IMG/VR virus record: IMGVR_UViG_3300043446_004613
Span: 124,001-188,000 of that record
Strand: one strand, 5' to 3'
Length of the DNA stretch: 64,000 nt
Shown: piece after piece, positions 45 through 56,702 of the stretch
Position numbering within the stretch: position 1 is the first letter of the stretch
Layout of the letters: each line of letters opens with the position of its first letter
The notes under the pieces: model-generated
Told to the model about the DNA's origin: nothing
Database searches by the model: none
What the model saw: only the letters and a program-made list of their open reading frames with translations
Made by a program: the position numbers and the translations under genes

Positions 45-980
45 TTGACATCTAATTTTATGCGTAGCCTAATTGCAATCAAAACCTATCGCCGACTCCA
101 CGCCCTCAAAGCTATGATGTCGGGCATCGAACAACACTGTCCGCAGTATCACTGCATTATCAGCGAAGACTGCGGTCAGCGTGATGGAACGACAGATTTC
201 ATTACTAAAGGCCGTGTCGGCACAGCTGTGCCGGAACTGCTGTCGACAAAGCATGTCGTTGAAAGCGGCGACGCTAACTTCATTAACGCAGATGTATACA
301 CTGGAGACGTAAATCTGGGTGTTACAGGCAACAACAACCGTTTGCTCAAGCTGTTCATGGATGGCGAGTGGGATCACCTGCTGCTGTGCGATGACGATTT
401 GCTCGTGACGGGTGATTTCGTTGAAGCATACGCGAACGCCCATGCAGACCTTGGTGTGGACATGTTTTGCTTCTGCGACTTCACTGAAGCATCTCCAGCC
501 ATATCCGGTGCCCCGGAAACGTATAAATGGACTACTTATCCGATGCGCGGTTATCAAGTAAAGTTTCTACCCCGCTTCACCGGCATCATGATGTCGGTAA
601 CACGCAGCCTCATTGAAAAGATAGGCTACATGGATGCCGAGTTCGGCAAGTTTGGAGAAGAACACTGCGACTGGACAATTCGTGCGCGTATGGCAGGCGG
701 CATACGTCTGAACAACACGGATATGAATTGTTTGGACATCGCCCATAACCGCCTGACCCATCAAAACGTACAGACCAGTATGTCAGGTTCAGCGCGTAAG
801 CACGCTGATCAAGAAGCCCACGTCGCTATGCAGCGGGCTGCCTATGAATACCGTTTGCGTCACTATTACCGGCCCTTCCGTCTTACCTATCCAGTGATGG
901 CGGCAGGCCATTCCGGTGTCGGCGTGCCCTGCCGCCAGCTGGATCAGATCGGCTATAGACTCGTGAACGCCCCTGCGTAG
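45..980 (+). CDS. glycosyltransferase family 2-like protein
   Basis: N-terminal LIAIKTYRR/IISEDCG, DxD motif (LLCDDD), C-terminal GYMDAEFGKFGEEHCDW typical of GT2; the real start may be ATG at 60. Confidence 0.7.
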   Translation: MTSNFMRSLIAIKTYRRLHALKAMMSGIEQHCPQYHCIISEDCGQRDGTTDFITKGRVGTAVPELLSTKHVVESGDANFINADVYTGDVNLGVTGNNNRLLKLFMDGEWDHLLLCDDDLLVTGDFVEAYANAHADLGVDMFCFCDFTEASPAISGAPETYKWTTYPMRGYQVKFLPRFTGIMMSVTRSLIEKIGYMDAEFGKFGEEHCDWTIRARMAGGIRLNNTDMNCLDIAHNRLTHQNVQTSMSGSARKHADQEAHVAMQRAAYEYRLRHYYRPFRLTYPVMAAGHSGVGVPCRQLDQIGYRLVNAPA

Positions 981-983
981 TTA
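977..983 (+). promoter_or_regulatory. GTAGTTA upstream motif (first of 15 copies, see findings)
   Basis: GTAGTTA ends 4 nt before the GTG at 988; its TAG is also the stop of the upstream gene. Confidence 0.55.
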
Positions 984-987
984 GGCT

Positions 988-2911: not shown

Positions 2912-3059
2912 TAACCGTAACGAGTATGCGGAACAGATCGTTGAACAGGTTATCGTAGACTCTGACCTGCTTTCCACCGATGACGTTGAAACAATCGACA
3001 CGTTTAACCATGTTTTAGCCAAGCTGCTGGCGTATGCGTCAGGCAGTCCGGTAGCTTGA
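2877..3059 (+). CDS. short ORF, possibly the frameshifted C-terminus of 2396-2911
   Basis: 60-aa acidic helical-looking ORF overlapping the previous gene in the +1 frame. Confidence 0.3.
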   Translation: MRKLNAGKISDDNRNEYAEQIVEQVIVDSDLLSTDDVETIDTFNHVLAKLLAYASGSPVA

Positions 3060-3078
3060 CCTATAACCACTTAAATCC

Positions 3079-3483: not shown

Positions 3484-5178
3484 ATGCGTTGTTACGTACG
3501 CAGAATTTCTTGTATGCGACAATACCTTATTGAAGGCATAACGGGCGCGTTTCCGTTCATTGTGGATCGGAACAAAACTCCGGTAACGGAGAGTCGCCCC
3601 AACGGCGGTAGCTTCACCCGCATCCCCGGACGTTTCAGCGTTTGCGACTGTGTCAACGGCAACAATCGCCGTTACAGCAAGCGTGTCTGGGAAAAGAACC
3701 TCACTGAAGGCTCAGTCCTACAGGAGTCCATCAAGCGCAACGCTGCTTTCGGCCTCCTCGAACACCCCAAAGACGGTATTGTCACTCTTCTCTCTCCGAT
3801 TTCCCACCACGTTACCAAAGCAGAAATGGTTGAAACCCGCGATGCCTCCGGCAAGCCGGTTTATGAAGTCTGCGGCGAAATCGTCATTTTCAATACCGAT
3901 GAAGGCCGCAAGTTGACCGCTTTGATCGAAGGCGGCTACAACCCGCTCGTCTCCAGCCGTGGTTACGGCTCTCTGAACAAAGCCAGCGACGGTGTTGATG
4001 AAGTCGCTGAGGACTTTGTCTGCGAAGGTTGGGACGTGGTAATCAAGCCGAGCTTTGAGCAGGCTGAACTGACTCCGGCCCGCAGTACTTCTACGGCCAC
4101 TATGGCCACCCCCGTCGCTCCTAACCCGCAAGCTGAATCTAAACAGCCTGCGCCCGCTACAGTGACGGAAACCAAACAAAATTTGAAGGAGTCGACGCCT
4201 TCAACTGGTGCGGATAAACCGACCAGCGTAACCACAAACAAAAATAACACTATGGAACTGAACACATTGAAGTCGCAGATCGAGAGCCTCCGCTCCGCTG
4301 ATGCTGCGAAACCCAATCGGTTCGCTGAGTCCATGACGAAAGTCGAGGAACTGCACCAGCAGGTTGCTGAGTGGGCCGCTGCCGATCCCAAACGTTCTTG
4401 GGAAGCGCAGAAGCTCCACAAGTCCCTCGACTCCATCGGCGAAGGACTCACTGCGACCATTAACCGTCCCGCTGACACCGCTCGTAAGCTCAGCGAGAAC
4501 AACAACAAGCTGCTTCGCGTTATCGACGCCGTCGCCAAGACTGCCGTCACTTACAAGAAGAAGCTCGGCGAAGCCCTCAAATCCGACGGCAGCCGCGTCA
4601 AGATGATCGAAGAACTGACCCGTCGCGGTCAGGGCTGGCAGCGTATCGCCGAGAGCCGTAAGCAAAAGCTCATGGTTCAGGAAAAAGATTTCGATACCGC
4701 GTGCGAAGCGCTCGACATCATGGCCCAGCGCTATCACGAAGACGTGACCGAACTCGGTCGTCGCCTCATCGTCCTTGAATTCAAGGAGAAGGCCCAGACG
4801 CCTGAAATCCAGAAGTCGCTCAAAGAAGCGACCCGTCTGCGTCACATCGTTACCATCCGCGAACGGCTGGAAGGTAAAAAGAAACCCGTCTCTGAAACCT
4901 CTGCGGAAGGCAAGCAGCCCAAAGAAGGCGAGCAGCCTAGCCACGAAGGCATCAAGGACGAGAAGCAAAAGGGCGCTGGCAGCCCTGATGCTGGCAAGGT
5001 TGCTGAAGAACCCGGCAAGGTGAAAACCGAGTCGAAGGCTCCCGGCGACGCGGCCAAAAAGACTCAGACCGTTTCTGAGTCACAGGTGCTGAAGACGGAT
5101 CGCGCTGACATCAGTGTCCGCTCGGTCAATGAATCGGTGGAACTGGTGCGTCGGCTTAGCACCGCACCCGCCAAGTAA
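3484..5178 (+). CDS. prohead core protease (T4 gp21-like) fused to a coiled-coil scaffold region
   Basis: NGNNRRY, GLLEHP, VSSRGYGS and GWDVVIKPSF motifs of the gp21/U9 family, followed by about 300 aa of charged helical sequence; directly upstream of the MCP; likely start 3514. Confidence 0.88.
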   Translation: MRCYVRRISCMRQYLIEGITGAFPFIVDRNKTPVTESRPNGGSFTRIPGRFSVCDCVNGNNRRYSKRVWEKNLTEGSVLQESIKRNAAFGLLEHPKDGIVTLLSPISHHVTKAEMVETRDASGKPVYEVCGEIVIFNTDEGRKLTALIEGGYNPLVSSRGYGSLNKASDGVDEVAEDFVCEGWDVVIKPSFEQAELTPARSTSTATMATPVAPNPQAESKQPAPATVTETKQNLKESTPSTGADKPTSVTTNKNNTMELNTLKSQIESLRSADAAKPNRFAESMTKVEELHQQVAEWAAADPKRSWEAQKLHKSLDSIGEGLTATINRPADTARKLSENNNKLLRVIDAVAKTAVTYKKKLGEALKSDGSRVKMIEELTRRGQGWQRIAESRKQKLMVQEKDFDTACEALDIMAQRYHEDVTELGRRLIVLEFKEKAQTPEIQKSLKEATRLRHIVTIRERLEGKKKPVSETSAEGKQPKEGEQPSHEGIKDEKQKGAGSPDAGKVAEEPGKVKTESKAPGDAAKKTQTVSESQVLKTDRADISVRSVNESVELVRRLSTAPAK

Positions 5179-5215
5179 CAAGTAAGCCATCCAACAACAA
5201 AACTAACGAACTACT

Positions 5216-6679
5216 ATGGTAATTCTCACTGAAAGTGGAAGACCGGTATTGGCGTCTGATGGCGGGCACATCTCCCGTTTCATGGACGTCTTGGAGTGGG
5301 GCTATCGCCTCGCTGAAACATCGTTGGGCATCCCTGAAAAGAACTCACGCGGCCTTTGGGAAGCGCGGGGCTGGAAGGAATTTGTCCAACACATGCCTGA
5401 GCACAAGCGTCCTTTGGCCGCAATCATGCTCGAAAACTGCCGCAGCCGTTTTGGCCGCCTCGATGAAGTGACTCGTACCACGTCACTCGGCACGTTCGAT
5501 AAATGGATTTTCCCCATTATCGCCAACATGTCCGAGAACGACGTGATCGACCAGCTTGTCGCGCTCCAGCCGATGGCAGGCCCGGTGAGCCAGATCGTCT
5601 ACATGGACATCGTCACTGGCCGTCGCAAAGGCCGTACTCCCGCAGGTGCCCCGATGTGGCGTGCCTTGCAGGGCGCGGTTGACCGCGACGACGACGGCGA
5701 TGAAGTCGTTCAGGACGAAACCGGCACTGCGTCGAGCGGTGGCGTGTTCATCCTCGAATGGACGCCTATCCGTCCCGGTACCGTCACAGGTTCCTACAGC
5801 ACCGTGAACTTTGCTGACGACGGCAACGGTCAGATCATCAACGTAGCCACCAACGCCGCGATCGGTACAGTCGTGTACCAAGGCACTGGCGCTGGCACCG
5901 TGACGATCGCCGGGGCAGCCAACACGGACTACTCCGTGACCTACGCGTTCAATTCTGAAGGCAACCTCGCCATTCAGGATTACGAAATGAAGCTTTCCAG
6001 CACTCCGGTGACTGCGAAAGTGATGAAGCTCAAGACCCTGTGGTCTGAGGAAGCCGACCAGAACCTTCAGGCGATGTACAACATCAAGGCCGAAAGCGTT
6101 CTGCTCAACGCGCTCACCAACGCCCTCCAGTATCAGAAACACCGCCAAGTGATCTTCGATCTCCGCGCCAAAGCTGATGCCGGTTTCGTTGTCTGGGATG
6201 CGATCGCTCCGTCTGGTGTCAACTACCAGACCCACAAGTTCAGCATCATCGACGCGTTCGAGACTGCATCGAACTTCATCTACGGCGCTACGAACATGGT
6301 TGCCGGTAACTGGTTGCTGCTTGGCCTCCAAGCCGCTACCGTGGTTGCCACGCTGCCGCAGTTCGTGCCGAAGAACAACCGCGTGCAGATGCAGGGTATC
6401 ACCTACATCGGCGATCTTGGCAACAAGAAGGTCTTCGCTGACCCGCACTATCCGACTAACGAGTTCCTCGTCGGTCACAAGGGTGACCAGTTCCTGACCA
6501 CCGGCTACGTGTTGGCCGAATATCAGAAGCTGTACACCACCCCTGACGTGGTGCTGCCGGACTTCATCCATCAACGTGGCTTTGCGACGAGCTTCGCCCG
6601 GAAGATGGTTAACAGCAAGATGTACTGCCGTGGCCTCGTTCAGAATAGTCCAACGGCGTTCGGCCAAACGATTGGCTAA
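5216..6679 (+). CDS. major capsid protein (T4 gp23-like)
   Basis: DQLVALQPMAGPVSQIVYM motif, KLKTLWSEEADQNLQAMYNI segment, strongly biased codons, position after protease/scaffold, own terminator. Confidence 0.92.
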   Translation: MVILTESGRPVLASDGGHISRFMDVLEWGYRLAETSLGIPEKNSRGLWEARGWKEFVQHMPEHKRPLAAIMLENCRSRFGRLDEVTRTTSLGTFDKWIFPIIANMSENDVIDQLVALQPMAGPVSQIVYMDIVTGRRKGRTPAGAPMWRALQGAVDRDDDGDEVVQDETGTASSGGVFILEWTPIRPGTVTGSYSTVNFADDGNGQIINVATNAAIGTVVYQGTGAGTVTIAGAANTDYSVTYAFNSEGNLAIQDYEMKLSSTPVTAKVMKLKTLWSEEADQNLQAMYNIKAESVLLNALTNALQYQKHRQVIFDLRAKADAGFVVWDAIAPSGVNYQTHKFSIIDAFETASNFIYGATNMVAGNWLLLGLQAATVVATLPQFVPKNNRVQMQGITYIGDLGNKKVFADPHYPTNEFLVGHKGDQFLTTGYVLAEYQKLYTTPDVVLPDFIHQRGFATSFARKMVNSKMYCRGLVQNSPTAFGQTIG

Positions 6680-6698
6680 GAGTAAGCTGAAAATTCAT

Positions 6699-6727
6699 AA
6701 ACCCCGCAGGAAACTGCGGGGTTTTTT
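6699..6727 (+). terminator. Rho-independent terminator of the MCP gene
   Basis: aaaccccgcag-GAAA-ctgcggggttt hairpin followed by a T tract, 20 nt after the MCP stop. Confidence 0.9.
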
Positions 6728-6856
6728 GTTGCTTTATTTTGCTAACTAGCTAAAAGTAAGCTGGTGCAGGCAGGTAAGCTCAAGCTTGACCAGTTTCGGG
6801 AATATGTGAAGCGTGCGCTGACAACCAAGCTGTAGATAGTTACATAAAATATAATG

Positions 6857-6884
6857 TTGACTTTCAGCGCCGGGCGCTTACTCT
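6857..6884 (+). promoter_or_regulatory. sigma70-like promoter, probably giving a leaderless transcript
   Basis: TTGACT-N16-TACTCT, with the -10 box ending 6 nt before ATG 6891. Confidence 0.45.
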
Positions 6885-6890: not shown

Positions 6891-7268
6891 ATGCTATTTG
6901 AACCGACGGCCACCAACATCACCAAGCGCTACTTTGTAGACCGCGATGGCGTGCCGACATCCCGGATGCAGAACCGGCCCGGCATGGGCCACTTTGAGAT
7001 CGCGCAGTCTGTTGTAAATCTTGATCCGAATACTGATCTGTACCAGCAGATGTTTGCTTTGAAATACCTGCGCGTAGGCGAAGATGCGGCGAGCAATACG
7101 CTGTACGTCGACGCTCCTGTCAGCAGCGCGGATAAGCTCACTACGCGTCAACGGCGCTGGCTAAAGGACAAACAAGCGGAAGGCTGGAAAGTCGAGTTCA
7201 ACAATCGCTCGTTTGTTGAGGCCCGCGACACCCGCGCCACGCAGGTTGTAAAGCAGCTGCTCGGGTAG
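6891..7268 (+). CDS. hypothetical protein
   Basis: 125 aa, ends in ATQVVKQLLG motif. Confidence 0.6.
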   Translation: MLFEPTATNITKRYFVDRDGVPTSRMQNRPGMGHFEIAQSVVNLDPNTDLYQQMFALKYLRVGEDAASNTLYVDAPVSSADKLTTRQRRWLKDKQAEGWKVEFNNRSFVEARDTRATQVVKQLLG

Positions 7269-7275
7269 TTAGACT

Positions 7276-8904: not shown

Positions 8905-8938
8905 GCATGTGATTAGATCACGTGCTAGTAGTTAGAGC

Positions 8939-11322: not shown

Positions 11323-11449
11323 ACCGCCAACCAAATACCCAACAGTGGTCGCTACGGAAGTAATCACCACCGGCACGCTGGGAACCGAATACGGAAATAA
11401 TTTAAGATGAACTGCACATGCCTCAACCTTGGTGTGTAGTTATAGTGCT

Positions 11450-13836: not shown

Positions 13837-13886
13837 CACCAAAAAACATAAAACTAGAACTTTTTTGCGGGTAGTTAAAGTAGCGT

Positions 13887-14653: not shown

Positions 14654-14699
14654 GGTTTCAACGTATACGCATGTGTGTAGTTAGTCAACATTATATTTT

Positions 14700-19854: not shown

Positions 19855-19886
19855 ACTCTTCAAAGAACAGGATGTAGTTAATCCGA

Positions 19887-20664: not shown

Positions 20665-22095
20665 ATGCCTCTTTGGCTCGAAGAACGCCTGACGTTTGAT
20701 AAACTGTTTCGGATCAGCGATCCGAAGCGGGTCTATCGTTCTTTTACCGTACGCGGGCCGCCACTGGAGATCGACTCCTATCAGGATGTCGTCTATTACA
20801 TCTTCAATTTCAAGTCCAGCCCAAGCACAACCGGATTACGGCATCGCGGGTACGTCAAGTTTTTCAAACCGAAAAACAAGAGTCCCAAAAGCGTGCCGCT
20901 CCAGCATTTGGATTGCTTGGTTGATTGCACGTGTCCCGACTTCCGTTATCGCTGGGCATGGGCAAACAAGCAGCGCCAAAGCAGCGTTGTCGGCCCGAAC
21001 TCGCTTAATCAGGCGTGGAATAAAGCGCCGCGTAAAACGAATCCATCCGGTAAGCCGGGTCTGTGCAAGCACATCTTGGCGGCGCGGCAGTACATCTACG
21101 GTTTGATGTCCGCGTTCCCCGGTGATGAACCAGATACGGCATATAAGCTTGACCGTCTGACCAAATACGCGACCAAACGCTGGACTGATTTTGAAGGTCA
21201 GATGCAAGCAGCCAAGGAGCGTGAAAAAGAAATTCGCCGTCGGCGCGAACAGCGTAATCTTGGCCAGCTGCCACTGACACCACCACCGTTACCTGCTGCC
21301 TCAAAGGCTCCAGCGTCTACACCTGTACGGCCAGTGTCTACAGAACCGAGTGTCGATGCTGTGAAGTCAGCACCGCAGGCGCAAAAGCCCAAGGCGACCA
21401 CGGCGTTCAAAAGCGCATCACCGGAACCTTTGCCTACCGATGTTACCGCTAAAAAGCCTGCTACACCGCAGCAAAAACAAGTTTCCGTTAAACCAGCACT
21501 GACACCGACATCGAAGCCGAAACGTGTGATCGGAAACCGTATCGTGCAGCCGTATAATCCTAGTGACAAGTACTGGATCAAACCAGAGGAGGCACTGCTG
21601 TGTGTGCCGATACGCGATATTATTTTGGAGAGTGTAGTTAGTGCGAACGGTAAAAGTATGAGCAACATCAAAGAAGCCATCAAACTCGTCGAGGAACTGG
21701 AAGCTGACGAAATTCAGCTTGGTGACGAAATGCCTGCAACTGACATGGGCTTGGGTAGCGACATCGGCGGTGAAACGCTGGAACCGAGCGAACCTGCCGT
21801 CAGTGACAGCGCTATCGGTGCCGATACGGAAGGCGACACGGCGCTTAGCCTCCTCCGCTCCATCAAAACCTCTCTTGAACAGATTGCCGCCGCAGTCGCT
21901 CCTGTCGACGCTCTCCCTGCCCCCGGTGAAGCCGGTGAAGGCGTGGAAGGTGCCGAAGAAGCTCCGATGCCCGGCATGCCTCCCGCTGATCTCGGTGCCG
22001 AAGCCGCTGCCGAGGGTGAAACCCCGGAAGAGGAAGAAGCCGAGCACGAAGACGACGAAGCCGAAGCTGAAGCTGAAGGCGAAGAAAAAGAGTAA
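20665..22095 (+). CDS. SWIM zinc-finger protein with Pro/Lys linker and acidic tail
   Basis: VDCTCPDF...LCKHIL (CxC...CxH); possible internal start at 21658. Confidence 0.65.
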   Translation: MPLWLEERLTFDKLFRISDPKRVYRSFTVRGPPLEIDSYQDVVYYIFNFKSSPSTTGLRHRGYVKFFKPKNKSPKSVPLQHLDCLVDCTCPDFRYRWAWANKQRQSSVVGPNSLNQAWNKAPRKTNPSGKPGLCKHILAARQYIYGLMSAFPGDEPDTAYKLDRLTKYATKRWTDFEGQMQAAKEREKEIRRRREQRNLGQLPLTPPPLPAASKAPASTPVRPVSTEPSVDAVKSAPQAQKPKATTAFKSASPEPLPTDVTAKKPATPQQKQVSVKPALTPTSKPKRVIGNRIVQPYNPSDKYWIKPEEALLCVPIRDIILESVVSANGKSMSNIKEAIKLVEELEADEIQLGDEMPATDMGLGSDIGGETLEPSEPAVSDSAIGADTEGDTALSLLRSIKTSLEQIAAAVAPVDALPAPGEAGEGVEGAEEAPMPGMPPADLGAEAAAEGETPEEEEAEHEDDEAEAEAEGEEKE

Positions 22096-24212: not shown

Positions 24213-24232
24213 TCTGCTAGAATAGTTACGGT

Positions 24233-24787: not shown

Positions 24788-25131
24788 TAATGGACGCGCT
24801 AAAGCGGACTATCGACCAGTCGATTAAGACACGACTGGCGAACCCAGCGCAACGTAAACAGGTTGTAGACACCGTGCTGGCAGGATTTGAGCATCTGCGT
24901 AAAAATCCAGTGCCCGATTTGCCCGAGCGCACGCAAAAACTACGCCAGCGCGTTGAAAAGCTGGCGCAGGAAGTAGCGGTAGAGTTTTCCGGTGATAAGC
25001 TCGTAGTTAAGGTGGCCGGGGCGTCAGAGTCGTTGTTGGTAGAGCTTAGACGCGGCACAAACTGGTATGCGCCGTGGGAAGAGATTGACGTGATTGTTCT
25101 GGCTGCGATATTAAAAGACCCAAGCAAGTAG
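24784..25131 (+). CDS. hypothetical (possible head-tail) protein
   Basis: 115 aa, ATGA coupled, ELRRGT motif. Confidence 0.5.
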   Translation: MIMDALKRTIDQSIKTRLANPAQRKQVVDTVLAGFEHLRKNPVPDLPERTQKLRQRVEKLAQEVAVEFSGDKLVVKVAGASESLLVELRRGTNWYAPWEEIDVIVLAAILKDPSK

Positions 25132-25140
25132 TTAAGTCAA

Positions 25141-25468: not shown

Positions 25469-25488
25469 ACAGACCCGTAATTAAGTGT

Positions 25489-26562: not shown

Positions 26563-26670
26563 ACACCCGCGAGTACGTGGCGTTGCGTTAAGTGCGCTGA
26601 ATGATACTGGTAGTTAAAAGTGTGAGCGCGGTTTTAATAGATTAGCGCGTAGTTAAGACAGCAAAAGATT

Positions 26671-31324: not shown

Positions 31325-31331
31325 GTTCTTA
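31325..31331 (+). promoter_or_regulatory. GTTCTTA upstream motif (one of 9 exact copies, see findings)
   Basis: ends 5 nt before ATG 31337. Confidence 0.55.
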
Positions 31332-32760: not shown

Positions 32761-33338
32761 AAACGATTATTCACGTCGGCTGCGGCCCGATCTACATGGA
32801 GTCTGATAGGAACTACCGCTGGATAAACATGGACATCAATCCAGCTTTTAAGGCGGATATTACAGGTGATTGTAGACAGCTTAGCGTTCTGATTGGGAAT
32901 AACGTCGGTGACTACTTGTGGTCGTGCCATCATCTGGAGCATCTGCCTTACCCGGACGGTGTCCAAGAGACATTGCGCCAGTTCCTAGCGGTGCTTAAAC
33001 CCGGAGGAATTGCGCGTATCGCCACACCTGACCTTGAAACAGTAGCGCAGGCTTACTGTGACGGCAGCAGCTTGAAGTTCATCTACGGCGAAGACTTCAA
33101 GGGCTACGCGCATATCGACTGTCCGGCGGAGCGGTTCTTGTTTTTCATGCGTGCGTGGGAACACACGTTTATCCCCGATTTCGTCCTTTTGTCTACACTT
33201 ATGCGTGAAGCAGGCTTTGAAAACGTCCGCCGTTGTACCGCAAATCAAAGCGCCATACCCGGCTGGTGCCATGACCGGTTTCAATCTGAGAGCCTATACA
33301 TTGAAGGACAGAAACCTGCGCAGACCGAGTGTATTTAG
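32757..33338 (+). CDS. class I SAM-dependent methyltransferase
   Basis: IHVGCG, NMDI, HHLEHL and LKPGGIARIATPD motifs. Confidence 0.82.
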   Translation: MKTIIHVGCGPIYMESDRNYRWINMDINPAFKADITGDCRQLSVLIGNNVGDYLWSCHHLEHLPYPDGVQETLRQFLAVLKPGGIARIATPDLETVAQAYCDGSSLKFIYGEDFKGYAHIDCPAERFLFFMRAWEHTFIPDFVLLSTLMREAGFENVRRCTANQSAIPGWCHDRFQSESLYIEGQKPAQTECI

Positions 33339-37213: not shown

Positions 37214-37232
37214 TCTCTATTGTAGTTACAGC

Positions 37233-44810: not shown

Positions 44811-44830
44811 AGTTCTAAGAACAAGATAGC

Positions 44831-45889
44831 ATGATCGGGCCGGTACTAAAGCAGGAAATTGAGAATACGTTCATCGTGGTGCGCGAAAAGTGTACCACCC
44901 TCGAATTGGTATTCTGCTGCCCCGAGTGCGGCGATAAGACAGGCCATCGCAGCGTAAACCTCAAGTCCGGCAAGACTTTCTGCTGGAAATGCAACAAGGG
45001 CAAGAATAACAAAGGGAACTTTGTTGCGTGGGCGCGGGCGCTCGGTTTCCATTTTACGGCAGATACAGGGGCGAATAACGTTCCGGTTGAACAACTGCTT
45101 TATGCTGAAGATCAGCAGGAATCGGTTGTTCCCGTTATCCAAGAGGTGAAGCTGCCTGAAGGTTTTACACCAATCGCCCGGACACCCAAGAGCGTATACA
45201 CTAAGTTGATAACCAAGATGGCTGCACGTAAAAACCTAGACTACGCTGCATTTGCTGAAGCAGGAGCCGGTTATACCCCAGCCCACCCAAAATGGGAGCC
45301 TTTCTGCATTTTTCCGGTGCAAGAGTACGGTTTGACGGTCTACTACCAAGGGCGCACTTATGTAGACGTGCCGGGGGAGACAACCAAGAAATTTCCAAGT
45401 CGGAACGAGGTAACTTTTGGTGCTGGTAACTGGGTGTACAACATCGATACCGTTCGTGAGCAACAGCCGGAAATTGTTGTCATCGTGGAATCCATATTGA
45501 ACGTGCTGTCGTTGCGCAAAAAGCTTCGGCAGCTTGGCTGGAAAAATATCGTTCCTGTCTGTGTTTTTAAGCACCACCTAAGCCAAGTACAAGCACTTAA
45601 ACTACTGCGTTGCCAAGGTGTTCAAGAGTTCTGCATGCTGTTTGACCACGATGCGATCGATAAAACGTGGCAGAGTGTCAGCGCGATTGCGAACAAGAAG
45701 GTCGTGACGATCGCTGAGATGCCGTTATTAGACGGCAATAAGAAATGCGATCCAAACGACGATGTGGACGCCGCGATAAACGCAATCGAAAATCGTCAGC
45801 TGTATACAGCTTCGAGCTTCAGCCGTAAAATGCTGGAGGCAGATGATCCGAGAATTTTTAGTATCACATCACGAAATATCTGTTCTTAG
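44831..45889 (+). CDS. DNA primase (zinc finger plus Toprim)
   Basis: CPECGD...CWKC zinc finger, VIVESILN and LFDHDA (DxD) Toprim motifs. Confidence 0.8.
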   Translation: MIGPVLKQEIENTFIVVREKCTTLELVFCCPECGDKTGHRSVNLKSGKTFCWKCNKGKNNKGNFVAWARALGFHFTADTGANNVPVEQLLYAEDQQESVVPVIQEVKLPEGFTPIARTPKSVYTKLITKMAARKNLDYAAFAEAGAGYTPAHPKWEPFCIFPVQEYGLTVYYQGRTYVDVPGETTKKFPSRNEVTFGAGNWVYNIDTVREQQPEIVVIVESILNVLSLRKKLRQLGWKNIVPVCVFKHHLSQVQALKLLRCQGVQEFCMLFDHDAIDKTWQSVSAIANKKVVTIAEMPLLDGNKKCDPNDDVDAAINAIENRQLYTASSFSRKMLEADDPRIFSITSRNICS

Positions 45890-46551: not shown

Positions 46552-46758
46552 ATGGTTTGGGGAAAGACGTCCTTGCGGATGTCGAAAGCGCAGTTTCGTA
46601 GGCAGTGCCCTGAGTGCGGTCGGCGCGAAATTTGGGTACCGGCGCGGGGAGCCGCGAAAGGTTACTGGTCAGTTGTTGATCTTCACAATCTCGAACAGCG
46701 AAGCCCAGAATGGCTTGCTTCGCATTTGATGTCTTGGATAACAGGCGACCGTAGTTAA
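46552..46758 (+). CDS. small hypothetical protein
   Basis: 68 aa with CPECG. Confidence 0.35.
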   Translation: MVWGKTSLRMSKAQFRRQCPECGRREIWVPARGAAKGYWSVVDLHNLEQRSPEWLASHLMSWITGDRS

Positions 46759-50618: not shown

Positions 50619-50631
50619 ACAGGCTAAGAAC

Positions 50632-50656: not shown

Positions 50657-50679
50657 CGTGATCTACGCAGACGGCTCGA

Positions 50680-52439: not shown

Positions 52440-52661
52440 GTGGAACTTACATTGATGACAAAGCTATATTCACTGGCTGTAAACAGACAGGAAGTCTGTC
52501 GGGTCGAAATTGAAGCCCCGGCATGGCTGCCGGTAACGCCGCGTGTACCGAAAGAATGGCTGCGCGGAGTCGTCACCAAGGCGCTTCACCGCTATTTTTC
52601 TGAGTCGTCCCTGTATTTAGATTGTCATGACCGAAGCACGCGCAGCACAATTTTTAATTGA
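52440..52661 (+). CDS. small hypothetical protein
   Basis: GTG 6 nt after GTTCTTA. Confidence 0.4.
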   Translation: MELTLMTKLYSLAVNRQEVCRVEIEAPAWLPVTPRVPKEWLRGVVTKALHRYFSESSLYLDCHDRSTRSTIFN

Positions 52662-53559: not shown

Positions 53560-53611
53560 ACCTCTAAGAACAGCATTTTGAGAATTTTCTGTTCTCGTAG
53601 TTAAAGATATT

Positions 53612-55585
53612 ATGGCTGATACCAAAACCAGCAGTTTGTTGCGCTACATGGGACTTACGGGTTCGAGTGGGGCGCACACCGGTTCTCTAGTGCCTCGTGC
53701 CCAAACGCCCGACGCCGATCAACGGCTATGGCAGGAATTTCAAGATGCCGGTCGTGTAAGCGATCCTGAAATCTGGACGAAGTTCAATTCCATGATGAAG
53801 CGTCCGACGACGTTCGACGCGATGCTTCAGATGTGGGATGAGATGAGTCAGTGGGACTTGCTGGCGGCAGCGCTCGTCGAAATTGTCGATGAAGCAACGC
53901 AGGCCGATGCCAACAGCCCCGGCACGTTATGGTACCAGTGCAACGATACGGCTTTTGAGGAAGAACTGAACGACATGCTTGTTCGCCTCGATGTCGAGTC
54001 CTTGATTCAATCTCAGGTCTGGTATATCGCCGCGATGGGTAATCACTTCGAGAAATTGGAGTACGCACCGCACGACGGCATCATCGGGATGTCTTTTGTT
54101 CACCCAATGGAGATGCGTCGCTACTGGCTGGAGCGCAACCGCAAATGTATCGGATTCCGCTGGCTAAACCATAAACCGAACAAAGAAGACGTTTTTGTAC
54201 AGCCCGACAACTCGACGCCGGTTGAACGTGTTTCAATGGCCAGCGGCCAGAACGTCGAAGATTTGTGGTATCCGTGGGATTTTATGCACTTTCGCCGCAT
54301 GTTCCGCATGCGCATGAGTGAGCACGGTGAACCAATTTTTTCTGAAGCTGACGGCATCTATAAGAAGCTGCGCTTAGCTGTTGACCAGATGGTCGTCTGC
54401 CGTGCGCAAGTTCAACCTGATCGTTACGCGGTCAGCATCGACACACAAGAGCAACCGCCGATTGAGCAAATGAAAACGGTGCAGCGCTGGCGTCAGACGC
54501 TACGCAGCAAGCTGGCGTTCGGGCAGGTTGGATCGCCGAACGAGATGAATAGTGCCAGTGACTTTACGGCTTATTACAACGCGCTGGCTTTGGACACCAT
54601 GCTGTACATTGCACAGCCCAAAGGTTTCAACAACGTCATCACCAAGCTGCCCGGTACAGCAGACGTGCCTGATGTATACGACATCGAGCTTTTAACCGAC
54701 CTTTTCTACAGCATCATCGGCATGCCAAAGTCATGGTTCAGTAACCAAGGTGGTGGCGGCGGTGGCGGCGGTGAAACACCGTCCGGTCGTGCGTTGCTCG
54801 CTCAAGACATCCGTTTCCTGCGCAAGATCAAGTCCATCCGCAAGCCGATTACCAACTGTTACCAGTGGCTGGCTTACTTCCACGCCGTACTGAAAGGCAA
54901 GGATGTCAGCAAGCTCGACATCAAGGCCATGATGCCTCAGATCGGCAGTCTGGAAGAGCAGATGAAGATGGAAATGCTCGGTATCCAAGCCGACATCTTG
55001 CAGAAGCTAGGTGACGTCATGGAGCAGTACAAGTTGCCCAAGGAAGCGTGGATTGACGTCGTTTTCAAGCGCTACATGCACCTTCCAGACGAAGTTGTTT
55101 CTGTTTTCATGACGGCGCTGCCCTCTGAAATCGAGCAGCAGGAAGAGAGTCTTGGTCGCAAGGGTGCGCCCAAGATGGATAAACTGATCGAAGAGATCAA
55201 CGCCAAGATCGGCAATAGCCGTGAAGGTCAGGCAGCCATGAACATGCTGCGGGAGGTCTACTACAAAGAGAAGTTGCCGCAGGAACCGAAGACCAAGTGG
55301 ACAAAGGAACGTGTCCTTGAGCGTGCGCCGATGAAAGAGAACGACGTTGTTGTATCAAGCTTTGGTCGCCATCCGTTTGAGCTTAAACGCCGCACAAATT
55401 CTGACGGAAAACTCTCCGAGAGCAAAGTCGGCGAAAATGGTGCTGCCGGGGTCATCCAAGCCAAAGTCGATGCTAAGTCTGCGGGCTGGGACGATGACGG
55501 CGCTACGAAGCCTGTCAACGAGTCACAATCAGGTTCCGGCGAGGGCATGGGCGGCCCGTCCGTGTACCGTAAATGGATCGGCTAA
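53612..55585 (+). CDS. portal protein (T4 gp20-like)
   Basis: AALVEIVDEA, MHFRR, YKKLRLAVDQMVVCR..VQPDRYAVSID, ITKLPG, LAQDIRFLRKI. Confidence 0.9.
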   Translation: MADTKTSSLLRYMGLTGSSGAHTGSLVPRAQTPDADQRLWQEFQDAGRVSDPEIWTKFNSMMKRPTTFDAMLQMWDEMSQWDLLAAALVEIVDEATQADANSPGTLWYQCNDTAFEEELNDMLVRLDVESLIQSQVWYIAAMGNHFEKLEYAPHDGIIGMSFVHPMEMRRYWLERNRKCIGFRWLNHKPNKEDVFVQPDNSTPVERVSMASGQNVEDLWYPWDFMHFRRMFRMRMSEHGEPIFSEADGIYKKLRLAVDQMVVCRAQVQPDRYAVSIDTQEQPPIEQMKTVQRWRQTLRSKLAFGQVGSPNEMNSASDFTAYYNALALDTMLYIAQPKGFNNVITKLPGTADVPDVYDIELLTDLFYSIIGMPKSWFSNQGGGGGGGGETPSGRALLAQDIRFLRKIKSIRKPITNCYQWLAYFHAVLKGKDVSKLDIKAMMPQIGSLEEQMKMEMLGIQADILQKLGDVMEQYKLPKEAWIDVVFKRYMHLPDEVVSVFMTALPSEIEQQEESLGRKGAPKMDKLIEEINAKIGNSREGQAAMNMLREVYYKEKLPQEPKTKWTKERVLERAPMKENDVVVSSFGRHPFELKRRTNSDGKLSESKVGENGAAGVIQAKVDAKSAGWDDDGATKPVNESQSGSGEGMGGPSVYRKWIG

Positions 55586-56346
55586 TGTCACTGCGCATAA
55601 CCAACTTAAACGGGGTAAACCTCATCGAGCAACCACCAGAGACGGTAGCAGTTGCTGCTTATCCGGTAACCGGCGGTGCCGCAAACATCCAGTGTTTGTT
55701 GATTGAGGACTCAGCCCTGCCGGTTGACTACATCACCGGTACGCTTTACTGGGATGATGGCTCATTACCGGTTGTATACAACGGTACCAGCGCAGGCACG
55801 ATTGTCATTGATGCGACCCGTAACCTACAGCCCGGACAATACGTGGCGCGGGTGGAGGCGCACAATTATGCGGTGATACCGGAGGACTGCGGACGACCGC
55901 ACTGGAACACTGTCAGCGTAAACTTTGGATTCTATGTCCAACCGATTGATAAGCAACCGGTCAAGACGCCGTTGATCTACGGCCCGATTCTGCCAAAGGA
56001 CACCGGTTATCCGAACCAAGACCAATGGAACTGGAATCGCGGTGAAGACATTGAGATTCTTGCTTCTTCTGTAAAGATGCTGCTCACCACGCGCAAAGGC
56101 GAGCGGATCATGCAGCCGGGTTACGGTACCAATCTGCACGCCATCTTGTTCGAGCTTCAGACCACCGGTATTGAAACATTGGTTCAGCAAGAGATTGTAG
56201 ACGCGCTGGTGCTTTGGGAGCCTCGTGTGAGTTTACGTTCTATACTTGTGGAACGAACGGCAGAACGTGACGTAACAGTGACTGCCGATTTCGTCAGTAA
56301 ACTGAACCAACGGGATTTTACGATCCCAATGACATTCAACACGTGA
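55585..56346 (+). CDS. baseplate wedge protein with C-terminal gp25 domain
   Basis: SVKMLLTTRKGERIMQPGYGTNL...WEPRV gp25 signature, preceded by a PKD-like domain. Confidence 0.85.
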   Translation: MSLRITNLNGVNLIEQPPETVAVAAYPVTGGAANIQCLLIEDSALPVDYITGTLYWDDGSLPVVYNGTSAGTIVIDATRNLQPGQYVARVEAHNYAVIPEDCGRPHWNTVSVNFGFYVQPIDKQPVKTPLIYGPILPKDTGYPNQDQWNWNRGEDIEILASSVKMLLTTRKGERIMQPGYGTNLHAILFELQTTGIETLVQQEIVDALVLWEPRVSLRSILVERTAERDVTVTADFVSKLNQRDFTIPMTFNT

Positions 56347-56702
56347 ACGAAATTGACGCGAAAACGTTTGACCGGCGGACTTTTATCGATCGGTACATGA
56401 AAGAAGGTGGATTGACGTACAGTCAAGCCTGCCGCCTGCACACCGTAACCTGTAACGTATTTGAAGAGGCTATCATCACCGGCAGTAAAGTTACCATCGG
56501 GCGTGTTGGAGCCATCGTTCCCTGCTGGCGTTCACCGCGAGAAATCCAGATGCACTTTCGGCGGACGGGCCAGAAGGTCGAAAAAGGTGTTCACCGCACT
56601 TTTTTCATGGACGGACGCTACGAGTTCAAGTTCCGCCTCTACCGGCGATTCTTGGAATCTCGGAACCTAAAGTGGATGGTAGATATGCCGGTCAGTAGTT
56701 AA
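56343..56702 (+). CDS. HU/IHF-like DNA-binding protein
   Basis: EAIITGSKVTIGRVG...RSPR arm...FKFR pattern. Confidence 0.65.
   Translation: MNEIDAKTFDRRTFIDRYMKEGGLTYSQACRLHTVTCNVFEEAIITGSKVTIGRVGAIVPCWRSPREIQMHFRRTGQKVEKGVHRTFFMDGRYEFKFRLYRRFLESRNLKWMVDMPVSS

What the first reader, a model, noticed from the sequence alone, without database searches (positions are those of the whole stretch)
977..56701. GTAGTTA sits 4-17 nt upstream of 15 start codons, mostly virion genes
TAGTTA copies start at 978, 7266, 8929, 11437, 13872, 14678, 19875, 21635 (internal start), 24223, 25129, 26650, 37223, 46752, 53598 and 56696; 14 of 15 are preceded by G. They precede the tape measure, sheath, portal, fibre and candidate internal-protein genes, which lack SD sequences. 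GTAATTA (25477) and GTATTTA (33331, 52613) look like variants. By rough estimate, fewer than one hit is expected by chance in such windows. Inference: a phage-specific late promoter element, functionally like T4 TATAAATA but unrelated in sequence, making leaderless or very short-leader mRNAs. In three cases the TAG is also the upstream stop codon.
Basis: partly seen in the sequence, partly recalled or inferred. Interest (0 to 1): 0.72.

Follow-up and report, generated by a model that had tools for sequence, protein, structure and literature searches.

The report
Late promoter of a jumbo phage
GTAGTTA is very probably the late-gene promoter of an uncultivated 211-kb phage, read with a sigma factor the phage encodes, and it sits so close to start codons that the messages should have almost no leader and no ribosome-binding site.

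Summary
GTAGTTA occurs 16 times in the window, all on the + strand, and 47 times in the 211-kb phage genome. About 80% of copies lie 0-17 nt upstream of a start codon in the same orientation (expected 3%). It is also the top upstream k-mer in four related metagenomic jumbo phages.

- **Core:** nTAnTTA, with no conserved sequence upstream.
- **Start site:** a conserved pyrimidine-purine step lies 4-5 nt downstream, even when the start codon is further away. This fits a fixed transcription start.
- **Start codons:** they most often begin exactly at that purine, and GTG is common only there. The predicted mRNAs therefore have leaders of 0-12 nt.
- **Ribosome-binding sites:** Shine-Dalgarno sequences are at background level genome-wide.

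Two other promoter-like classes also abut start codons. GTTCT(T/A) precedes mostly DNA-metabolism genes, and sigma70-like promoters precede small, likely early genes. Orthologues keep their class.

Outside the window the phage encodes one conserved, divergent sigma70-family protein of 336 aa inside a GTTCT-class operon. It is the likely reader of GTAGTTA.

No transcript 5' ends could be obtained, so the promoter role and the sigma assignment remain inferences.

The parts
977..983 (+). GTAGTTA, then 4 nt and GTG 988 (215 aa). This is the first gene of the same-strand run holding the head protease (3484-5178) and the major capsid protein (5216-6679). TAG 978-980 is the stop of ORF 45-980.
7265..7271 (+). 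GTAGTTA, then 4 nt and ATG 7276 (80 aa). TAG 7266-7268 is the stop of ORF 6891-7268.
8928..8934 (+). GTAGTTA, then 4 nt and ATG 8939 (72-aa ORF, not picked by my gene caller).
11436..11442 (+). GTAGTTA, then 7 nt and ATG 11450 (76 aa). Sits in a divergent intergenic region.
13871..13877 (+). GTAGTTA, then 9 nt and ATG 13887 (135 aa). The motif is kept before the orthologue in locus L029.
14677..14683 (+). GTAGTTA, then 16 nt and ATG 14700 (782 aa, no family match). It overlaps, on the other strand, a sigma70-like promoter (TTGACT-N15-TATACG, 14688-14662) for the divergent gene 14653-14291.
19874..19880 (+). GTAGTTA, then 6 nt and ATG 19887 (258 aa). It lies back to back with a GTTCTT copy (19868-19863, - strand) before the SbcC-like gene 19854-17905.
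21634..21640 (+). GTAGTTA inside gene 20665-22095, 17 nt before the in-frame ATG 21658 (C-terminal 145 aa). An internal motif plus in-frame ATG, with a conserved N-terminus, is also present in the G003 orthologue.
24222..24228 (+). ATAGTTA variant, then 4 nt and GTG 24233 (184 aa). Orthologues carry GTAGTTA (G003), GTATTTA (G005) and CTAGTTA (G002). The GTG aligns with ATG in two orthologues.
25003..25009 (+). GTAGTTA inside ORF 24784-25131 with no convincing gene after it. An orphan copy.
25128..25134 (+). GTAGTTA, then 6 nt and ATG 25141 (87 aa). TAG 25129-25131 is the stop of ORF 24784-25131.
25477..25483 (+). GTAATTA variant, then 5 nt and GTG 25489 (357 aa).
26610..26616 (+). GTAGTTA, a tandem copy 39 nt upstream of the sheath copy. 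It is followed by a 7-codon GTG mini-ORF ending at TAG 26643-26645.
26649..26655 (+). GTAGTTA, then 15 nt and ATG 26671 (tail sheath, 765 aa; a weaker tail-tube match follows at 28973). G004 and G005 sheath orthologues carry GTAGTTA 15-16 nt from the ATG. The long-spacing copies in G002 and G003 belong to other genes.
33331..33337 (+). GTATTTA variant, then 7 nt and ATG 33345 (117 aa). Orthologues carry GTATTTA (G003) and GTAGTTA (G005); G004 has ATACTTA after the longest-ORF start.
37222..37228 (+). GTAGTTA, then 4 nt and ATG 37233 (277 aa). It is in a divergent intergenic region, and the motif is kept in G002, G003 and G005.
46751..46757 (+). GTAGTTA, then 4 nt and GTG 46762 (1102 aa, no family match; the 'tape measure' label is unverified).
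52613..52619 (+). GTATTTA variant, then 7 nt and ATG 52627 (125 aa).
53597..53603 (+). GTAGTTA, then 8 nt and ATG 53612 (portal protein, 657 aa). It lies next to a divergent GTTCTT copy (53571-53566, - strand).
56695..56701 (+). GTAGTTA, then 7 nt and ATG 56709 (tail-fibre-like, 444 aa). Orthologues carry GTAATTA (G002), CTATTTA (G003) and CTATTTA (G004).

Best explanation
(G)TA(G)TTA is the promoter of the late, mainly virion-gene, class of an uncultivated ~211-kb myovirus with T4-like head and tail genes.

**Proposed mechanism**
- It acts as a single -10-like element with no -35 partner.
- Transcription starts at a purine 5 nt downstream of the motif: motif, N3, pyrimidine, purine(+1).
- In the commonest arrangement that purine is the first base of an ATG or GTG start codon, so the mRNA is leaderless.
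- Otherwise the leader is 1-12 nt and carries no Shine-Dalgarno sequence.

**Likely reader**
The element is most likely read by the host RNA polymerase core carrying a phage-encoded, highly divergent sigma70-family factor. This is a 336-aa protein at genome 114960-115970, minus strand, outside the window. It is made from an operon driven by the second promoter class, GTTCT(T/A). The order of expression would then be:
1. sigma70-like early promoters,
2. GTTCT(T/A) promoters (DNA metabolism and the sigma gene),
3. GTAGTTA promoters (virion genes).

**Shown in silico:** the motif, its position, its tolerance profile, its conservation, the pyrimidine-purine step, and the sigma fold.

**Inferred:** the promoter function, the exact start site, the late timing, and which factor reads the motif.
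For: **Position and conservation**
- 38 of 47 genome copies lie within 17 nt upstream of a same-strand start (expected 1.5; p = 7e-49). The same holds in four relatives, with p from 1e-10 to 1e-26.
- TAGTTA is the top k-mer upstream of starts in all five genomes.

**Shape of the element**
- There is no information content from -40 to -1.
- T2, A3, T6 and A7 are essential, while G1 and G4 are replaceable.
- Among 73 copies whose start codon is at least 6 nt away, motif+4 is a pyrimidine in 79% and motif+5 a purine in 79%. Flanking positions are about 45-55% (p = 4e-7).
- Spacing peaks at 4 nt (40 of 93 exact copies). GTG makes up 43% of starts at that spacing and about 5% at 6 nt or more.

**Start codons are correctly placed**
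- N-termini of orthologues align at these codons, and GTG aligns with ATG.

**Genome layout**
- TAACTAC|GTAGTTA palindromes fill the whole intergenic space between divergent genes at genome 87557-87570, and sit between opposed genes at 103662-103675, where only the + copy has a called ORF.
- First genes of same-strand runs carry one of the three motif classes in 41 of 62 cases, against 67 of 204 internal genes.
- Orthologues keep their class: A to A 41, A to B 2, B to B 22, B to A 0.
- Genes directly preceded by the motif include the sheath, portal, fibre-like protein, two baseplate wedge proteins and a head-tail adaptor. The capsid and protease lie downstream in a motif-headed run.

**Leaderless layout is general**
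- Bona fide sigma70-type promoters in relative G003 (about 22 copies of GTTTACA-N14-TGnTATAGT) are most often followed by exactly 6 nt and ATG.
- SD words are at background level.

**Sigma factor**
- PHROG 'late sigma transcription factor' matches weakly, at E 0.003.
- Pfam Sigma70_r2 matches 10 of 37 family members and the Mor HTH matches 18 of 37.
- 49 of the 50 best PDB fold matches and 30 of 30 Swiss-Prot model matches are sigma factors.
- It is predicted to bind the E. coli beta-prime clamp helices (score 0.61, best of 3 controls 0.04). In the tool's calibration this mark was reached by 58 of 80 solved complexes and 2 of 110 mismatched pairs, and the counts hold only roughly because my own alignment was used.
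- It is single-copy and conserved at 45-63% identity in all five genomes.
Against: - No 5'-end or time-course RNA data exist for this phage. Only DNA runs hold it, and one soil metatranscriptome holds relatives' capsid and protease contigs without end information.
- A 4-nt gap between TAGTTA and +1 is shorter than the 6-7 nt usual for sigma70-family -10 hexamers. If the start were 6-8 nt downstream, as in phiEco32, the commonest ATG/GTG would not be in the transcript.
- The sigma has a region-4-like HTH domain, yet there is no -35 element.
- Which of the two phage-specific classes the sigma reads is inferred only from its gene lying in a GTTCT-class operon. No second factor was found.
- The major capsid gene has no copy of its own.
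- A few copies precede no gene (window 25003 and 26610; genome 60017 and 74986).
- The family searches used here found no match to the T4 gp55 family beyond one weak PHROG hit, and a profile comparison with T4 gp55 is not significant.
Confidence: 0.78

Rival explanations
1. GTAGTTA is a promoter, but it is read by something other than the 336-aa sigma. Candidates are an undetected small gp55-like factor, a modified host holoenzyme, or an unrecognised phage polymerase. In that case the sigma reads the GTTCT(T/A) class or another set of promoters.
For: - There are two phage-specific motif classes but only one detectable sigma.
- The sigma has a region-4-like domain that a promoter without a -35 element does not need.
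- Many conserved proteins have no assigned function. Examples are the 219-aa early protein and the 233-, 301- and 364-aa proteins.
Against: - The sigma gene lies downstream of GTTCT-class promoters in a replication and recombination operon, so it cannot be needed to start that class unless it is supplied otherwise.
- No T7-like polymerase domain and no further Sigma70_r2 were found in six frames. The multisubunit polymerase families were not searched directly.
- The large unknown conserved proteins sit among baseplate genes.
Confidence: 0.15
2. The motif works in the RNA as a processing site. A phage or host endoribonuclease would cut polycistronic late transcripts just downstream of GUAGUUA, giving each cistron a leaderless 5' end.
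For: - The position is fixed and very short relative to start codons.
- Many copies sit inside same-strand gene arrays, overlapping the upstream stop codon.
- No RNA data exclude it.
Against: - Copies stand at the head of divergent genes where no other conserved promoter-like sequence exists, and back-to-back palindromes fill an entire intergenic region.
- The pyrimidine-purine step is the known preference of transcription start sites.
- A conserved sigma factor would be left without a promoter class.
- Sigma70-type promoters in the same clade show the same abutting geometry.
Confidence: 0.05
3. The motif is a translation-initiation signal that replaces the Shine-Dalgarno sequence. It would act by pairing with rRNA or by binding a phage protein, at the place where an SD sequence would sit.
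For: - It occupies -11 to -5 relative to many start codons.
- The genome has no SD signal.
Against: - Only about a fifth of genes have it, and the other genes also lack SD.
- Spacing ranges from 0 to 17 nt, and the conserved pyrimidine-purine step keeps its distance from the motif, not from the start codon.
- The class follows gene function and is kept among orthologues.
- A second, different 7-mer and true sigma70 promoters occupy the same place before other genes.
- From my own knowledge, the motif is not complementary to the conserved 3' end of 16S rRNA. The host is unknown, so this was not tested.
Confidence: 0.03

Closest known systems
Phage T4 late promoters (TATAAATA), read by host core polymerase with gp55, gp33 and the gp45 clamp
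   Same: - A single short element at about -10 with no -35 element.
- Many copies directly before virion genes, including copies inside same-strand arrays.
- The factor gene sits among replication and recombination genes.
- The phage shares T4-like head, portal, sheath and baseplate genes, and T4-like UvsX, gp32-like and gp46/47-like genes.
   Different: - The sequence is unrelated (nTAnTTA).
- The predicted start site is 5 nt, not about 6-7 nt, after the element, and it coincides with the start codon. T4 late mRNAs have leaders with SD sequences (my own knowledge).
- The sigma is 336 aa with region 2, 3 and 4-like parts, whereas gp55 is 185 aa. A profile comparison with T4 gp55 is not significant.
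- No gp33 or gp45 homologue was sought or found.
phiEco32 gp36 sigma and its single-element middle/late promoters (tAATGTAtA; PMC8948821)
   Same: A phage-encoded sigma directs host core polymerase to a single conserved element without a -35 element, located before middle and late genes.
   Different: - In phiEco32 the start sites lie 6-8 bp downstream and the sigma lacks region 4 (PMC8948821).
- Here the start codon itself lies 4-9 nt downstream, and the sigma keeps a region-4-like HTH domain.
- The phage type is unrelated (a podovirus).
'-10 region adjacent to ORFs' giving leaderless mRNAs in Deinococcus-Thermus (TANNNT about 6-7 bp before the ORF; PMC12340547), and leaderless genes of Actinobacteria (PMC3160421, PMC4633059)
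   Same: - A promoter -10 element stands where an RBS would be.
- GTG as well as ATG starts are used.
- Misannotated longer ORFs can be corrected by using the motif.
- The sigma70-type early promoters of relative G003 (TATAGT-N6-ATG) fit this pattern exactly.
   Different: - Those are host housekeeping promoters. Here the same layout is also used with two phage-specific elements.
- It appears to cover all promoter classes of a 211-kb virus with no SD-led genes at all.
- TAGTTA ends in A, so it does not fit TANNNT.
Late promoters of the non-virion RNA polymerases of jumbo phages (AR9 AACA-N6-TA/G; phiKZ TATG with G as the start; PMC5312081, PMC7598289)
   Same: Jumbo phages with compact late promoter motifs lying within about 11 nt of the start site and no -35 element.
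   Different: - Those are read by phage multisubunit polymerases. No phage polymerase was detected here (T7-like domain absent; the largest proteins have no polymerase match), and a sigma factor is present instead.
- AR9 leaders are 26-491 nt long (PMC5312081).

Membership tests
sigma70-family sigma factor (claim about the 336-aa protein, L007:6960-7970:-) | Region 2 (core binding and -10 recognition) recognisable by sequence | tested here: inconclusive
   - The window phage's own protein misses Pfam Sigma70_r2.
- 10 of 37 family members match it (best E 5e-4), below or near the cut-off.
- PHROG 234 'late sigma transcription factor' matches at E 0.003 over residues 60-154.
- A profile search of PDB sequences found nothing.
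sigma70-family sigma factor (claim about the 336-aa protein, L007:6960-7970:-) | Sigma fold: helical region 2, 3 and 4 domains | tested here: met
   - The AlphaFold model has mean pLDDT 76.
- 49 of the 50 best Foldseek PDB matches are sigma factors, aligned over 190-350 columns (best E 0.045, probability 0.98).
- 30 of 30 Swiss-Prot model matches are sigma factors (best E 0.008).
- Most named BFVD matches are phage sigma factors.
- TM-scores are low (0.2-0.4), as expected for flexibly linked domains, and E-values are weak.
sigma70-family sigma factor (claim about the 336-aa protein, L007:6960-7970:-) | C-terminal region-4-type helix-turn-helix | tested here: inconclusive
   - The Pfam Mor family (an HTH activator) matches residues 239-306 at E 0.001, below its cut-off.
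- 18 of 37 family members match it (best E 6e-6).
- PHROG 836 matches at E 1e-4.
- Sigma70_r4 itself does not hit this protein.
sigma70-family sigma factor (claim about the 336-aa protein, L007:6960-7970:-) | Binds the beta-prime clamp helices of core RNA polymerase | tested here: met
   - This is a prediction only. The score is 0.61 against 0.04 for the best of 3 controls.
- In the tool's calibration this mark was reached by 58 of 80 solved complexes and 2 of 110 mismatched pairs. The counts hold only roughly here because my own alignment was used.
- The interface covers E. coli RpoC residues 255-298 and protein residues 37-83 and 113-124.
- The pass may reflect likeness to solved sigma-core complexes.
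sigma70-family sigma factor (claim about the 336-aa protein, L007:6960-7970:-) | Confers promoter-specific initiation on core polymerase | not testable with these tools
   This needs in vitro transcription or an infected host.
T4-type late transcription system (gp55/gp33/gp45 with TATAAATA) | Promoter sequence TATAAATA centred at -10 | tested here: not met
   The element is nTAnTTA, and no TATAAATA-like word is enriched upstream of starts.
T4-type late transcription system (gp55/gp33/gp45 with TATAAATA) | A gp55 homologue | tested here: inconclusive
   - There is one weak PHROG 234 match.
- hhalign of the family profile against T4 gp55 gives E 0.88. The 35 aligned columns do fall on the region-2.2-like segment of both proteins.
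T4-type late transcription system (gp55/gp33/gp45 with TATAAATA) | gp33 co-activator and gp45 sliding clamp as a mobile enhancer | not tested
   No search for clamp, clamp loader or gp33 was made. The DNA polymerase is family A, not T4-like family B.
Leaderless-mRNA promoter layout (-10 element adjacent to the ORF) | Promoter element at a fixed, very short distance from the start codon, with no SD sequence | tested here: met
   - The spacing mode is 4 nt for GTAGTTA.
- The mode is 5 nt after GTTCTTN.
- The mode is 6 nt for TATAGT in G003.
- SD words are at background level.
Leaderless-mRNA promoter layout (-10 element adjacent to the ORF) | Transcript 5' end at, or within a few nt of, the start codon | not testable with these tools
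   No RNA run holds this phage. The indirect support is the pyrimidine-purine step at motif+4/+5.
Canonical sigma70 -10 hexamer (TANNNT) | T at the last position, 6-7 nt before +1 | tested here: not met
   TAGTTA ends in an essential A. GTAGTTT lies at gene starts in only 6% of its copies. The gap to the inferred +1 is 4 nt.

The most novel reading that the evidence does not exclude
A whole clade of uncultivated jumbo myoviruses, of about 200-240 kb and found in freshwater and soil, may run its entire gene-expression programme on leaderless or near-leaderless, SD-free mRNAs. All three temporal promoter classes would be built to start transcription at or next to the start codon: host-type sigma70, GTTCTTA, and GTAGTTA read by a new sigma family. 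The phage would support this translation mode with its own initiator tRNA, and it also carries a tmRNA. That would amount to the virus shifting translation initiation in the host towards its own leaderless messages.
Probability: 0.35. Interest if true: 0.75.

Novelty: new variant of a known kind. Interest (0 to 1): 0.6.

Why it matters
- **Annotation.** The result gives a ready-made regulatory map for a large, uncultivated and otherwise barely annotated phage clade. It covers about 50 late, about 40 middle and about 12 early promoters, and the map corrects start codons and reveals nested genes.
- **Testable pairing.** It pairs a new, very divergent sigma family (hundreds of metagenomic members) with a candidate 7-bp target, which can be tested in vitro without culturing the phage.
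- **Leaderless expression.** The near-total absence of Shine-Dalgarno sequences, promoters fused to start codons, frequent GTG at +1 and a phage initiator tRNA make this a natural system for asking how a virus can rely on leaderless translation. It could also be a source of compact promoter and start-codon parts.

Tried and rejected
- **Close isolates.** A DNA and a protein search of the phage collection with the 782-aa gene found nothing. The capsid and sheath proteins find only relatives below 30% identity, so no annotated close isolate exists.
- **Phage polymerase.** There is no PF00940 (T7-like polymerase) in six frames. The 1370-, 881-, 725-, 986- and 657-aa unknown proteins have no Pfam or PHROG polymerase hits. 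An ESM Atlas look-up of the 1370-aa protein gave only chance-level GNAT hits. That protein is not conserved in relatives.
- **Sigma by sequence.** Six-frame Sigma70_r2 and PDB sequence searches failed. hhalign against T4 gp55 was not significant.
- **Extra sigma factors.** Three Sigma70_r4 hits turned out to be small, non-conserved proteins with a generic N-terminal HTH, not sigma factors.
- **Factor for the GTTCT class.** The only conserved gene behind a sigma70-like promoter (219 aa) folds confidently (pLDDT 84) but has no PDB match.
- **Initiation factors.** No IF1 or IF3 domains were found.
- **RNA evidence.** No RNA run holds the phage. Laying a soil metatranscriptome gave only relatives' capsid and protease contigs at 80-90% identity.
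- **Other motif.** A TGTA(A/G)AC word seen before protease genes of relatives is not enriched at starts in this genome.
- **Literature.** A literature search for the motif string returned only primer sequences.
- **Orthologue footprinting.** The first attempt, with small proteins against short loci, failed because those proteins diverge too fast. It was redone with whole relatives' genomes.

Full report
**1. The observation**

GTAGTTA occurs 16 times in the window, always on the + strand, against 3.9 +/- 1.8 in dinucleotide shuffles. The copy at 24223 is ATAGTTA. Two further GTAGTTA copies, at 25003 and 26610, were missed.

The window is bases 124001-188000 of a 211,113-bp IMG/VR virus record from a freshwater metagenome. 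The record has 52% G+C and CheckV rates it 93% complete.

Genome-wide there are 47 copies on both strands, each oriented like the gene that follows. I called genes with a simple codon-usage model, which gave 266 ORFs covering 94% of the genome. With those calls, 38 of 47 copies lie 0-17 nt upstream of one of the first three candidate starts of an ORF. The expected number is 1.5 (p = 7e-49).

An unbiased k-mer count in the 25 nt upstream of all starts puts TAGTTA first, at 36 observed against 0.73 expected.

The TAG of the motif doubles as the upstream stop codon at 978, 7266 and 25129.

**2. Relatives**

No cultured phage is close. The capsid protein has a T4 gp23-like match at under 30% identity to Bacillus SP-15, Listeria, Maribacter and cyanobacterial myoviruses.

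IMG/VR holds many relatives. I fetched four large ones:

| Genome | Size | Note |
|---|---|---|
| G002 | 238 kb | |
| G003 | 223 kb | |
| G004 | 230 kb | terminal repeats, complete; 66% capsid identity |
| G005 | 129 kb | fragment |

In each of them TAGTTA or GTAGTTA is again the most enriched word upstream of starts, and 52-88% of exact copies lie at gene starts (p from 1e-10 to 1e-26).

Orthologous genes keep the motif while the flanking DNA has diverged. The encoded N-termini align at the codon that follows the motif, and GTG in one genome aligns with ATG in another. The start codons are therefore placed correctly, and the element is under selection gene by gene.

**3. Anatomy**

- Aligned on the motif, the 40 nt upstream carry no information. 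There is no -35 partner.
- Pooling single-mismatch variants over five genomes shows which positions matter. T2, A3, T6 and A7 are essential: variants lie at gene starts in 7% of copies or fewer. G1 and G4 are replaceable: CTAGTTA 57%, ATAGTTA 36%, GTAATTA 57%, GTATTTA 50%, GTACTTA 50%.
- The distance from the motif to the start codon peaks at 4 nt (40 of 93 exact copies), followed by 7, 5 and 6 nt. A few copies lie at 14-16 nt, including the G000, G004 and G005 sheath genes.
- At spacing 4 the base before the start codon is a pyrimidine in 93% of cases. GTG makes up 43% of start codons at that spacing, against about 5% at spacing 6 or more.
- Most telling, in the 73 copies whose start codon lies at least 6 nt away, motif+4 is still a pyrimidine (79%) and motif+5 a purine (79%). 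Neighbouring positions show no such bias (p = 4e-7).

A pyrimidine-purine step at a fixed distance from a -10-like element, independent of the ORF, is what a transcription start site looks like. It places +1 at the fifth base after the motif. The mRNAs would then be leaderless at spacing 4 and have 1-12-nt leaders otherwise.

**4. Context: three promoter-like classes and no SD**

The same k-mer screen shows two more classes.

- **GTTCT(T/A) class.** The consensus is yCyGTTCTTA. It precedes about 40 genes, and the start codon comes 5-8 nt after the 7-mer.
- **Sigma70-like class.** An AT-rich stretch is followed by TTGAC-N17-TATAC(A), ending 6-10 nt before ATG, at about 12 genes.

Relative G003 has about 22 near-identical copies of a textbook strong promoter. 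It consists of an A-rich upstream part, GTTTACA, a 14-nt spacer and the extended -10 TGnTATAGT. It is followed most often by exactly 6 nt and then ATG. That is the canonical distance from a -10 hexamer to +1, so these host-type promoters are built for leaderless mRNAs.

SD-like words upstream of starts are no more frequent than inside genes in all five genomes.

First genes of same-strand runs carry one of the three classes in 41 of 62 cases, against 67 of 204 internal genes (p = 3e-6). Several of the 21 exceptions carry degenerate versions. Back-to-back TAACTAC|GTAGTTA palindromes are the entire intergenic region between divergent genes at genome 87557-87570. A second such palindrome lies at 103662-103675, though only its + copy has a called ORF.

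**5. Which genes**

- **Directly behind GTAGTTA-type motifs:** tail sheath (a weaker tail-tube match follows it), portal, a fibre-like protein, two baseplate wedge proteins, a head-tail adaptor, and the first gene of the run containing the prohead protease and the major capsid protein. There is also a 2127-aa protein and many unknowns.
- **Behind GTTCT(T/A), or inside its operons:** DNA polymerase A, DnaB-like and two other helicases, primase, SbcC and SbcD, a RusA-like resolvase, an exonuclease, a replication initiator, UvsX-like and gp32-like proteins, and glycosyltransferases. A few non-replication genes also belong here: an endolysin-like protein and a weak baseplate-hub match.

Orthologues almost never change class: A to A 41, A to B 2, B to B 22, B to A 0 (p = 2e-15). 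This is the pattern of separate temporal regulons. 'Late' for GTAGTTA is inferred from gene function.

**6. The reader of the motif**

Neither a T7-like polymerase domain nor Sigma70_r2 is found in six frames. The large unknown conserved proteins lie among baseplate genes.

One conserved protein stands out. It is 336 aa, at genome 114960-115970 on the minus strand (L007:6960-7970:-), in the GTTCT-class operon with the UvsX-like and gp32-like genes.

- It hits PHROG 'late sigma transcription factor' (E 0.003, N-terminal half) and 'late transcriptional activator' (E 1e-4, C-terminal part).
- It has about 300 metagenomic homologues of the same length. Of 37 sampled, 10 match Pfam Sigma70_r2 and 18 match the Mor HTH.
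- An AlphaFold model (pLDDT 76) finds sigma factors as 49 of its 50 best PDB matches and 30 of 30 Swiss-Prot matches. It also finds phage sigma factors in BFVD. E-values are modest.
- A complex prediction places its region-2-like helices on the beta-prime clamp helices of E. coli RpoC. The score is 0.61 against 0.04 for the best of 3 controls. In the tool's calibration this mark was reached by 58 of 80 solved complexes and 2 of 110 mismatched pairs, and the counts hold only roughly here because my own alignment was used.
- It is single-copy in each of the five genomes.

Because its gene is transcribed from GTTCT-class promoters, the simplest cascade is:
1. host sigma70 promoters,
2. the GTTCT class, whose factor was not found,
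3. this sigma reading GTAGTTA.

That last link is an inference. I give it about 0.55-0.6.

**7. Rivals**

- **Translation signal in the SD position.** This does not explain the gene-class specificity, the variable spacing, the pyrimidine-purine step tied to the motif rather than to the start codon, or the fact that true sigma70 promoters occupy the same place.
- **RNA-processing site.** This cannot be excluded without knowing the chemistry of the 5' ends. It fails to provide promoters for divergent first genes and leaves the sigma without a target.
- **Geometry, the main internal tension.** The 4 nt between TAGTTA and +1 is short for a sigma70-family -10 hexamer. In phiEco32 the starts lie 6-8 bp after the element (PMC8948821). 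The sigma also keeps a region-4-like domain although no -35 element exists.

**8. Comparison with known systems**

- *T4 late promoters and phiEco32 gp36 promoters.* It works like these: a single -10-type element read with a phage sigma (PMC8948821).
- *Deinococcus-Thermus and Actinobacteria.* It works like their '-10 adjacent to ORF' leaderless layout (PMC12340547, PMC3160421, PMC4633059).
- *T4 gp55 system.* It is not shown to be a member. The promoter sequence differs, gp55 homology is inconclusive, and gp33 and gp45 were not examined.
- *AR9 and phiKZ late promoters.* It differs from these, which are read by phage multisubunit polymerases (PMC5312081).

**9. Related observation**

The phage carries an initiator-type tRNA-Met. 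It has a C1-A72 mismatch and is 92% identical to the four-copy E. coli tRNA-Met gene. It also carries a tmRNA (RF00023, 127 bits). Both lie behind a sigma70-like promoter. An extra supply of initiator tRNA would fit a leaderless translation strategy, but that link is speculation.

**10. Limits**

- There are no transcript data.
- The host is unknown.
- Gene calls are my own heuristic.
- Class labels rest on regular expressions, and some GTTCT assignments at alternative starts may be wrong.

Noticed in passing
window 19868-19863(-), 20650-20655(+), 31325-31330(+), 35464-35459(-), 44610-44605(-), 44822-44817(-), 44812-44817(+), 45882-45887(+), 52371-52366(-), 53571-53566(-), 61315-61320(+); about 40 copies genome-wide: A second promoter-like motif, GTTCT(T/A) (consensus yCyGTTCTTA), ends 5-9 nt before start codons. 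It mostly precedes DNA-metabolism genes: SbcC, SbcD, primase, DNA polymerase A and helicases. It is conserved in all four relatives, and orthologues never swap it for GTAGTTA. No factor for it was found.
   Followed up: partly
window 6857-6884(+) before ATG 6891; window 14688-14662(-) before ATG 14653; G003 (loci L071-L082), about 22 copies: Sigma70-like promoters (an AT-rich stretch plus TTGAC-N17-TATAC) end 6-10 nt before ATG. In relative G003, a near-identical GTTTACA-N14-TGnTATAGT promoter is followed most often by exactly 6 nt and then ATG. That is a textbook leaderless arrangement.
   Followed up: partly
whole genome and relatives G002-G005: Shine-Dalgarno-like words (GGAG, GAGG, AGGA, AAGG) in the -18 to -4 region of starts are at the same frequency as inside genes: 11-22% against 8-16%. 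The clade seems not to use SD-led initiation. The host is unknown.
   Followed up: partly
L006:9969-10045(+) and L006:10235-10652(+) (genome 99969-100045 and 100235-100652): The phage encodes an initiator-type tRNA-Met. It has a C1-A72 mismatch and is 92% identical over 77 nt to the four-copy E. coli tRNA-Met. Only two G:C pairs lie next to the anticodon loop. It also encodes a tmRNA (Rfam RF00023, 127.5 bits) with an unusually long 32-residue tag. A sigma70-like TTGACT-N17-TACAGT sits just upstream.
   Followed up: partly
window 21634-21660 inside gene 20665-22095: An internal GTAGTTA plus an in-frame ATG would give a separate C-terminal 145-aa product. The G003 orthologue has the same arrangement, with a conserved new N-terminus (M..K.A.KLVEELE). 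This looks like a nested late gene inside a GTTCT-class gene.
   Followed up: partly
window 26610-26655: There are tandem GTAGTTA copies before the sheath gene. The first is followed by a 7-codon GTG mini-ORF that stops just before the second. The sheath itself has a spacing of 15 nt to the ATG, and GTAGTTA at 15-16 nt is also seen before the G004 and G005 sheath orthologues.
   Followed up: no
window 5170-5215, and the same place in about 40 related loci (L010-L046): The major capsid gene has no promoter motif of its own. It is preceded in every relative by a C/A-rich, G-poor stretch (aacaacaacaaa...), possibly an SD-independent translation enhancer.
   Followed up: no
genome 87557-87570 (L005:15557-15570) and 103662-103675 (L006:13662-13675): These are perfect 14-bp palindromes, TAACTACGTAGTTA, made of two back-to-back motif copies. 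At 87557-87570 they make up nearly the whole intergenic region between divergent genes. At 103662-103675 only the + copy has a called ORF.
   Followed up: partly
L007:6960-7970:- (genome 114960-115970): This is a very divergent sigma70-family protein of 336 aa with about 300 metagenomic homologues. Sources mostly label them 'hypothetical protein'. It appears to be a new phage sigma family.
   Followed up: yes
L008:15703-16362:+ (genome 203203-203862): This is the only clade-conserved gene directly behind a sigma70-like promoter. It is 219 aa and folds confidently (pLDDT 84), but it has no PDB fold match or family. It is a candidate early regulator.
   Followed up: partly
L002:10998-11537:+, L008:16421-16972:+, L009:10709-11167:-: Three small proteins with an N-terminal HTH reach the Sigma70_r4 threshold or score just below it (24.0 against 24.1 bits for L008:16421-16972). 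They also match generic HTH families, lack region 2, and are not conserved in relatives. They are probably regulators rather than sigma factors.
   Followed up: partly
window 45-980(+); L007:12837-14069:-; L007:14091-15626:-: Three glycosyltransferase-like genes lie next to the replication and recombination operon. They may serve DNA or virion glycosylation.
   Followed up: no
L008:7986-14369:+ (genome 195486-201869): A 2127-aa protein preceded by GTAGTTA carries a C-terminal PhoD-like phosphatase domain (Pfam E 2e-22).
   Followed up: no
window 3600-6750: A soil metatranscriptome (run X3) holds contigs 80-90% identical to the protease and capsid genes. Relatives of this phage are therefore transcriptionally active in soil.
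   Followed up: partly
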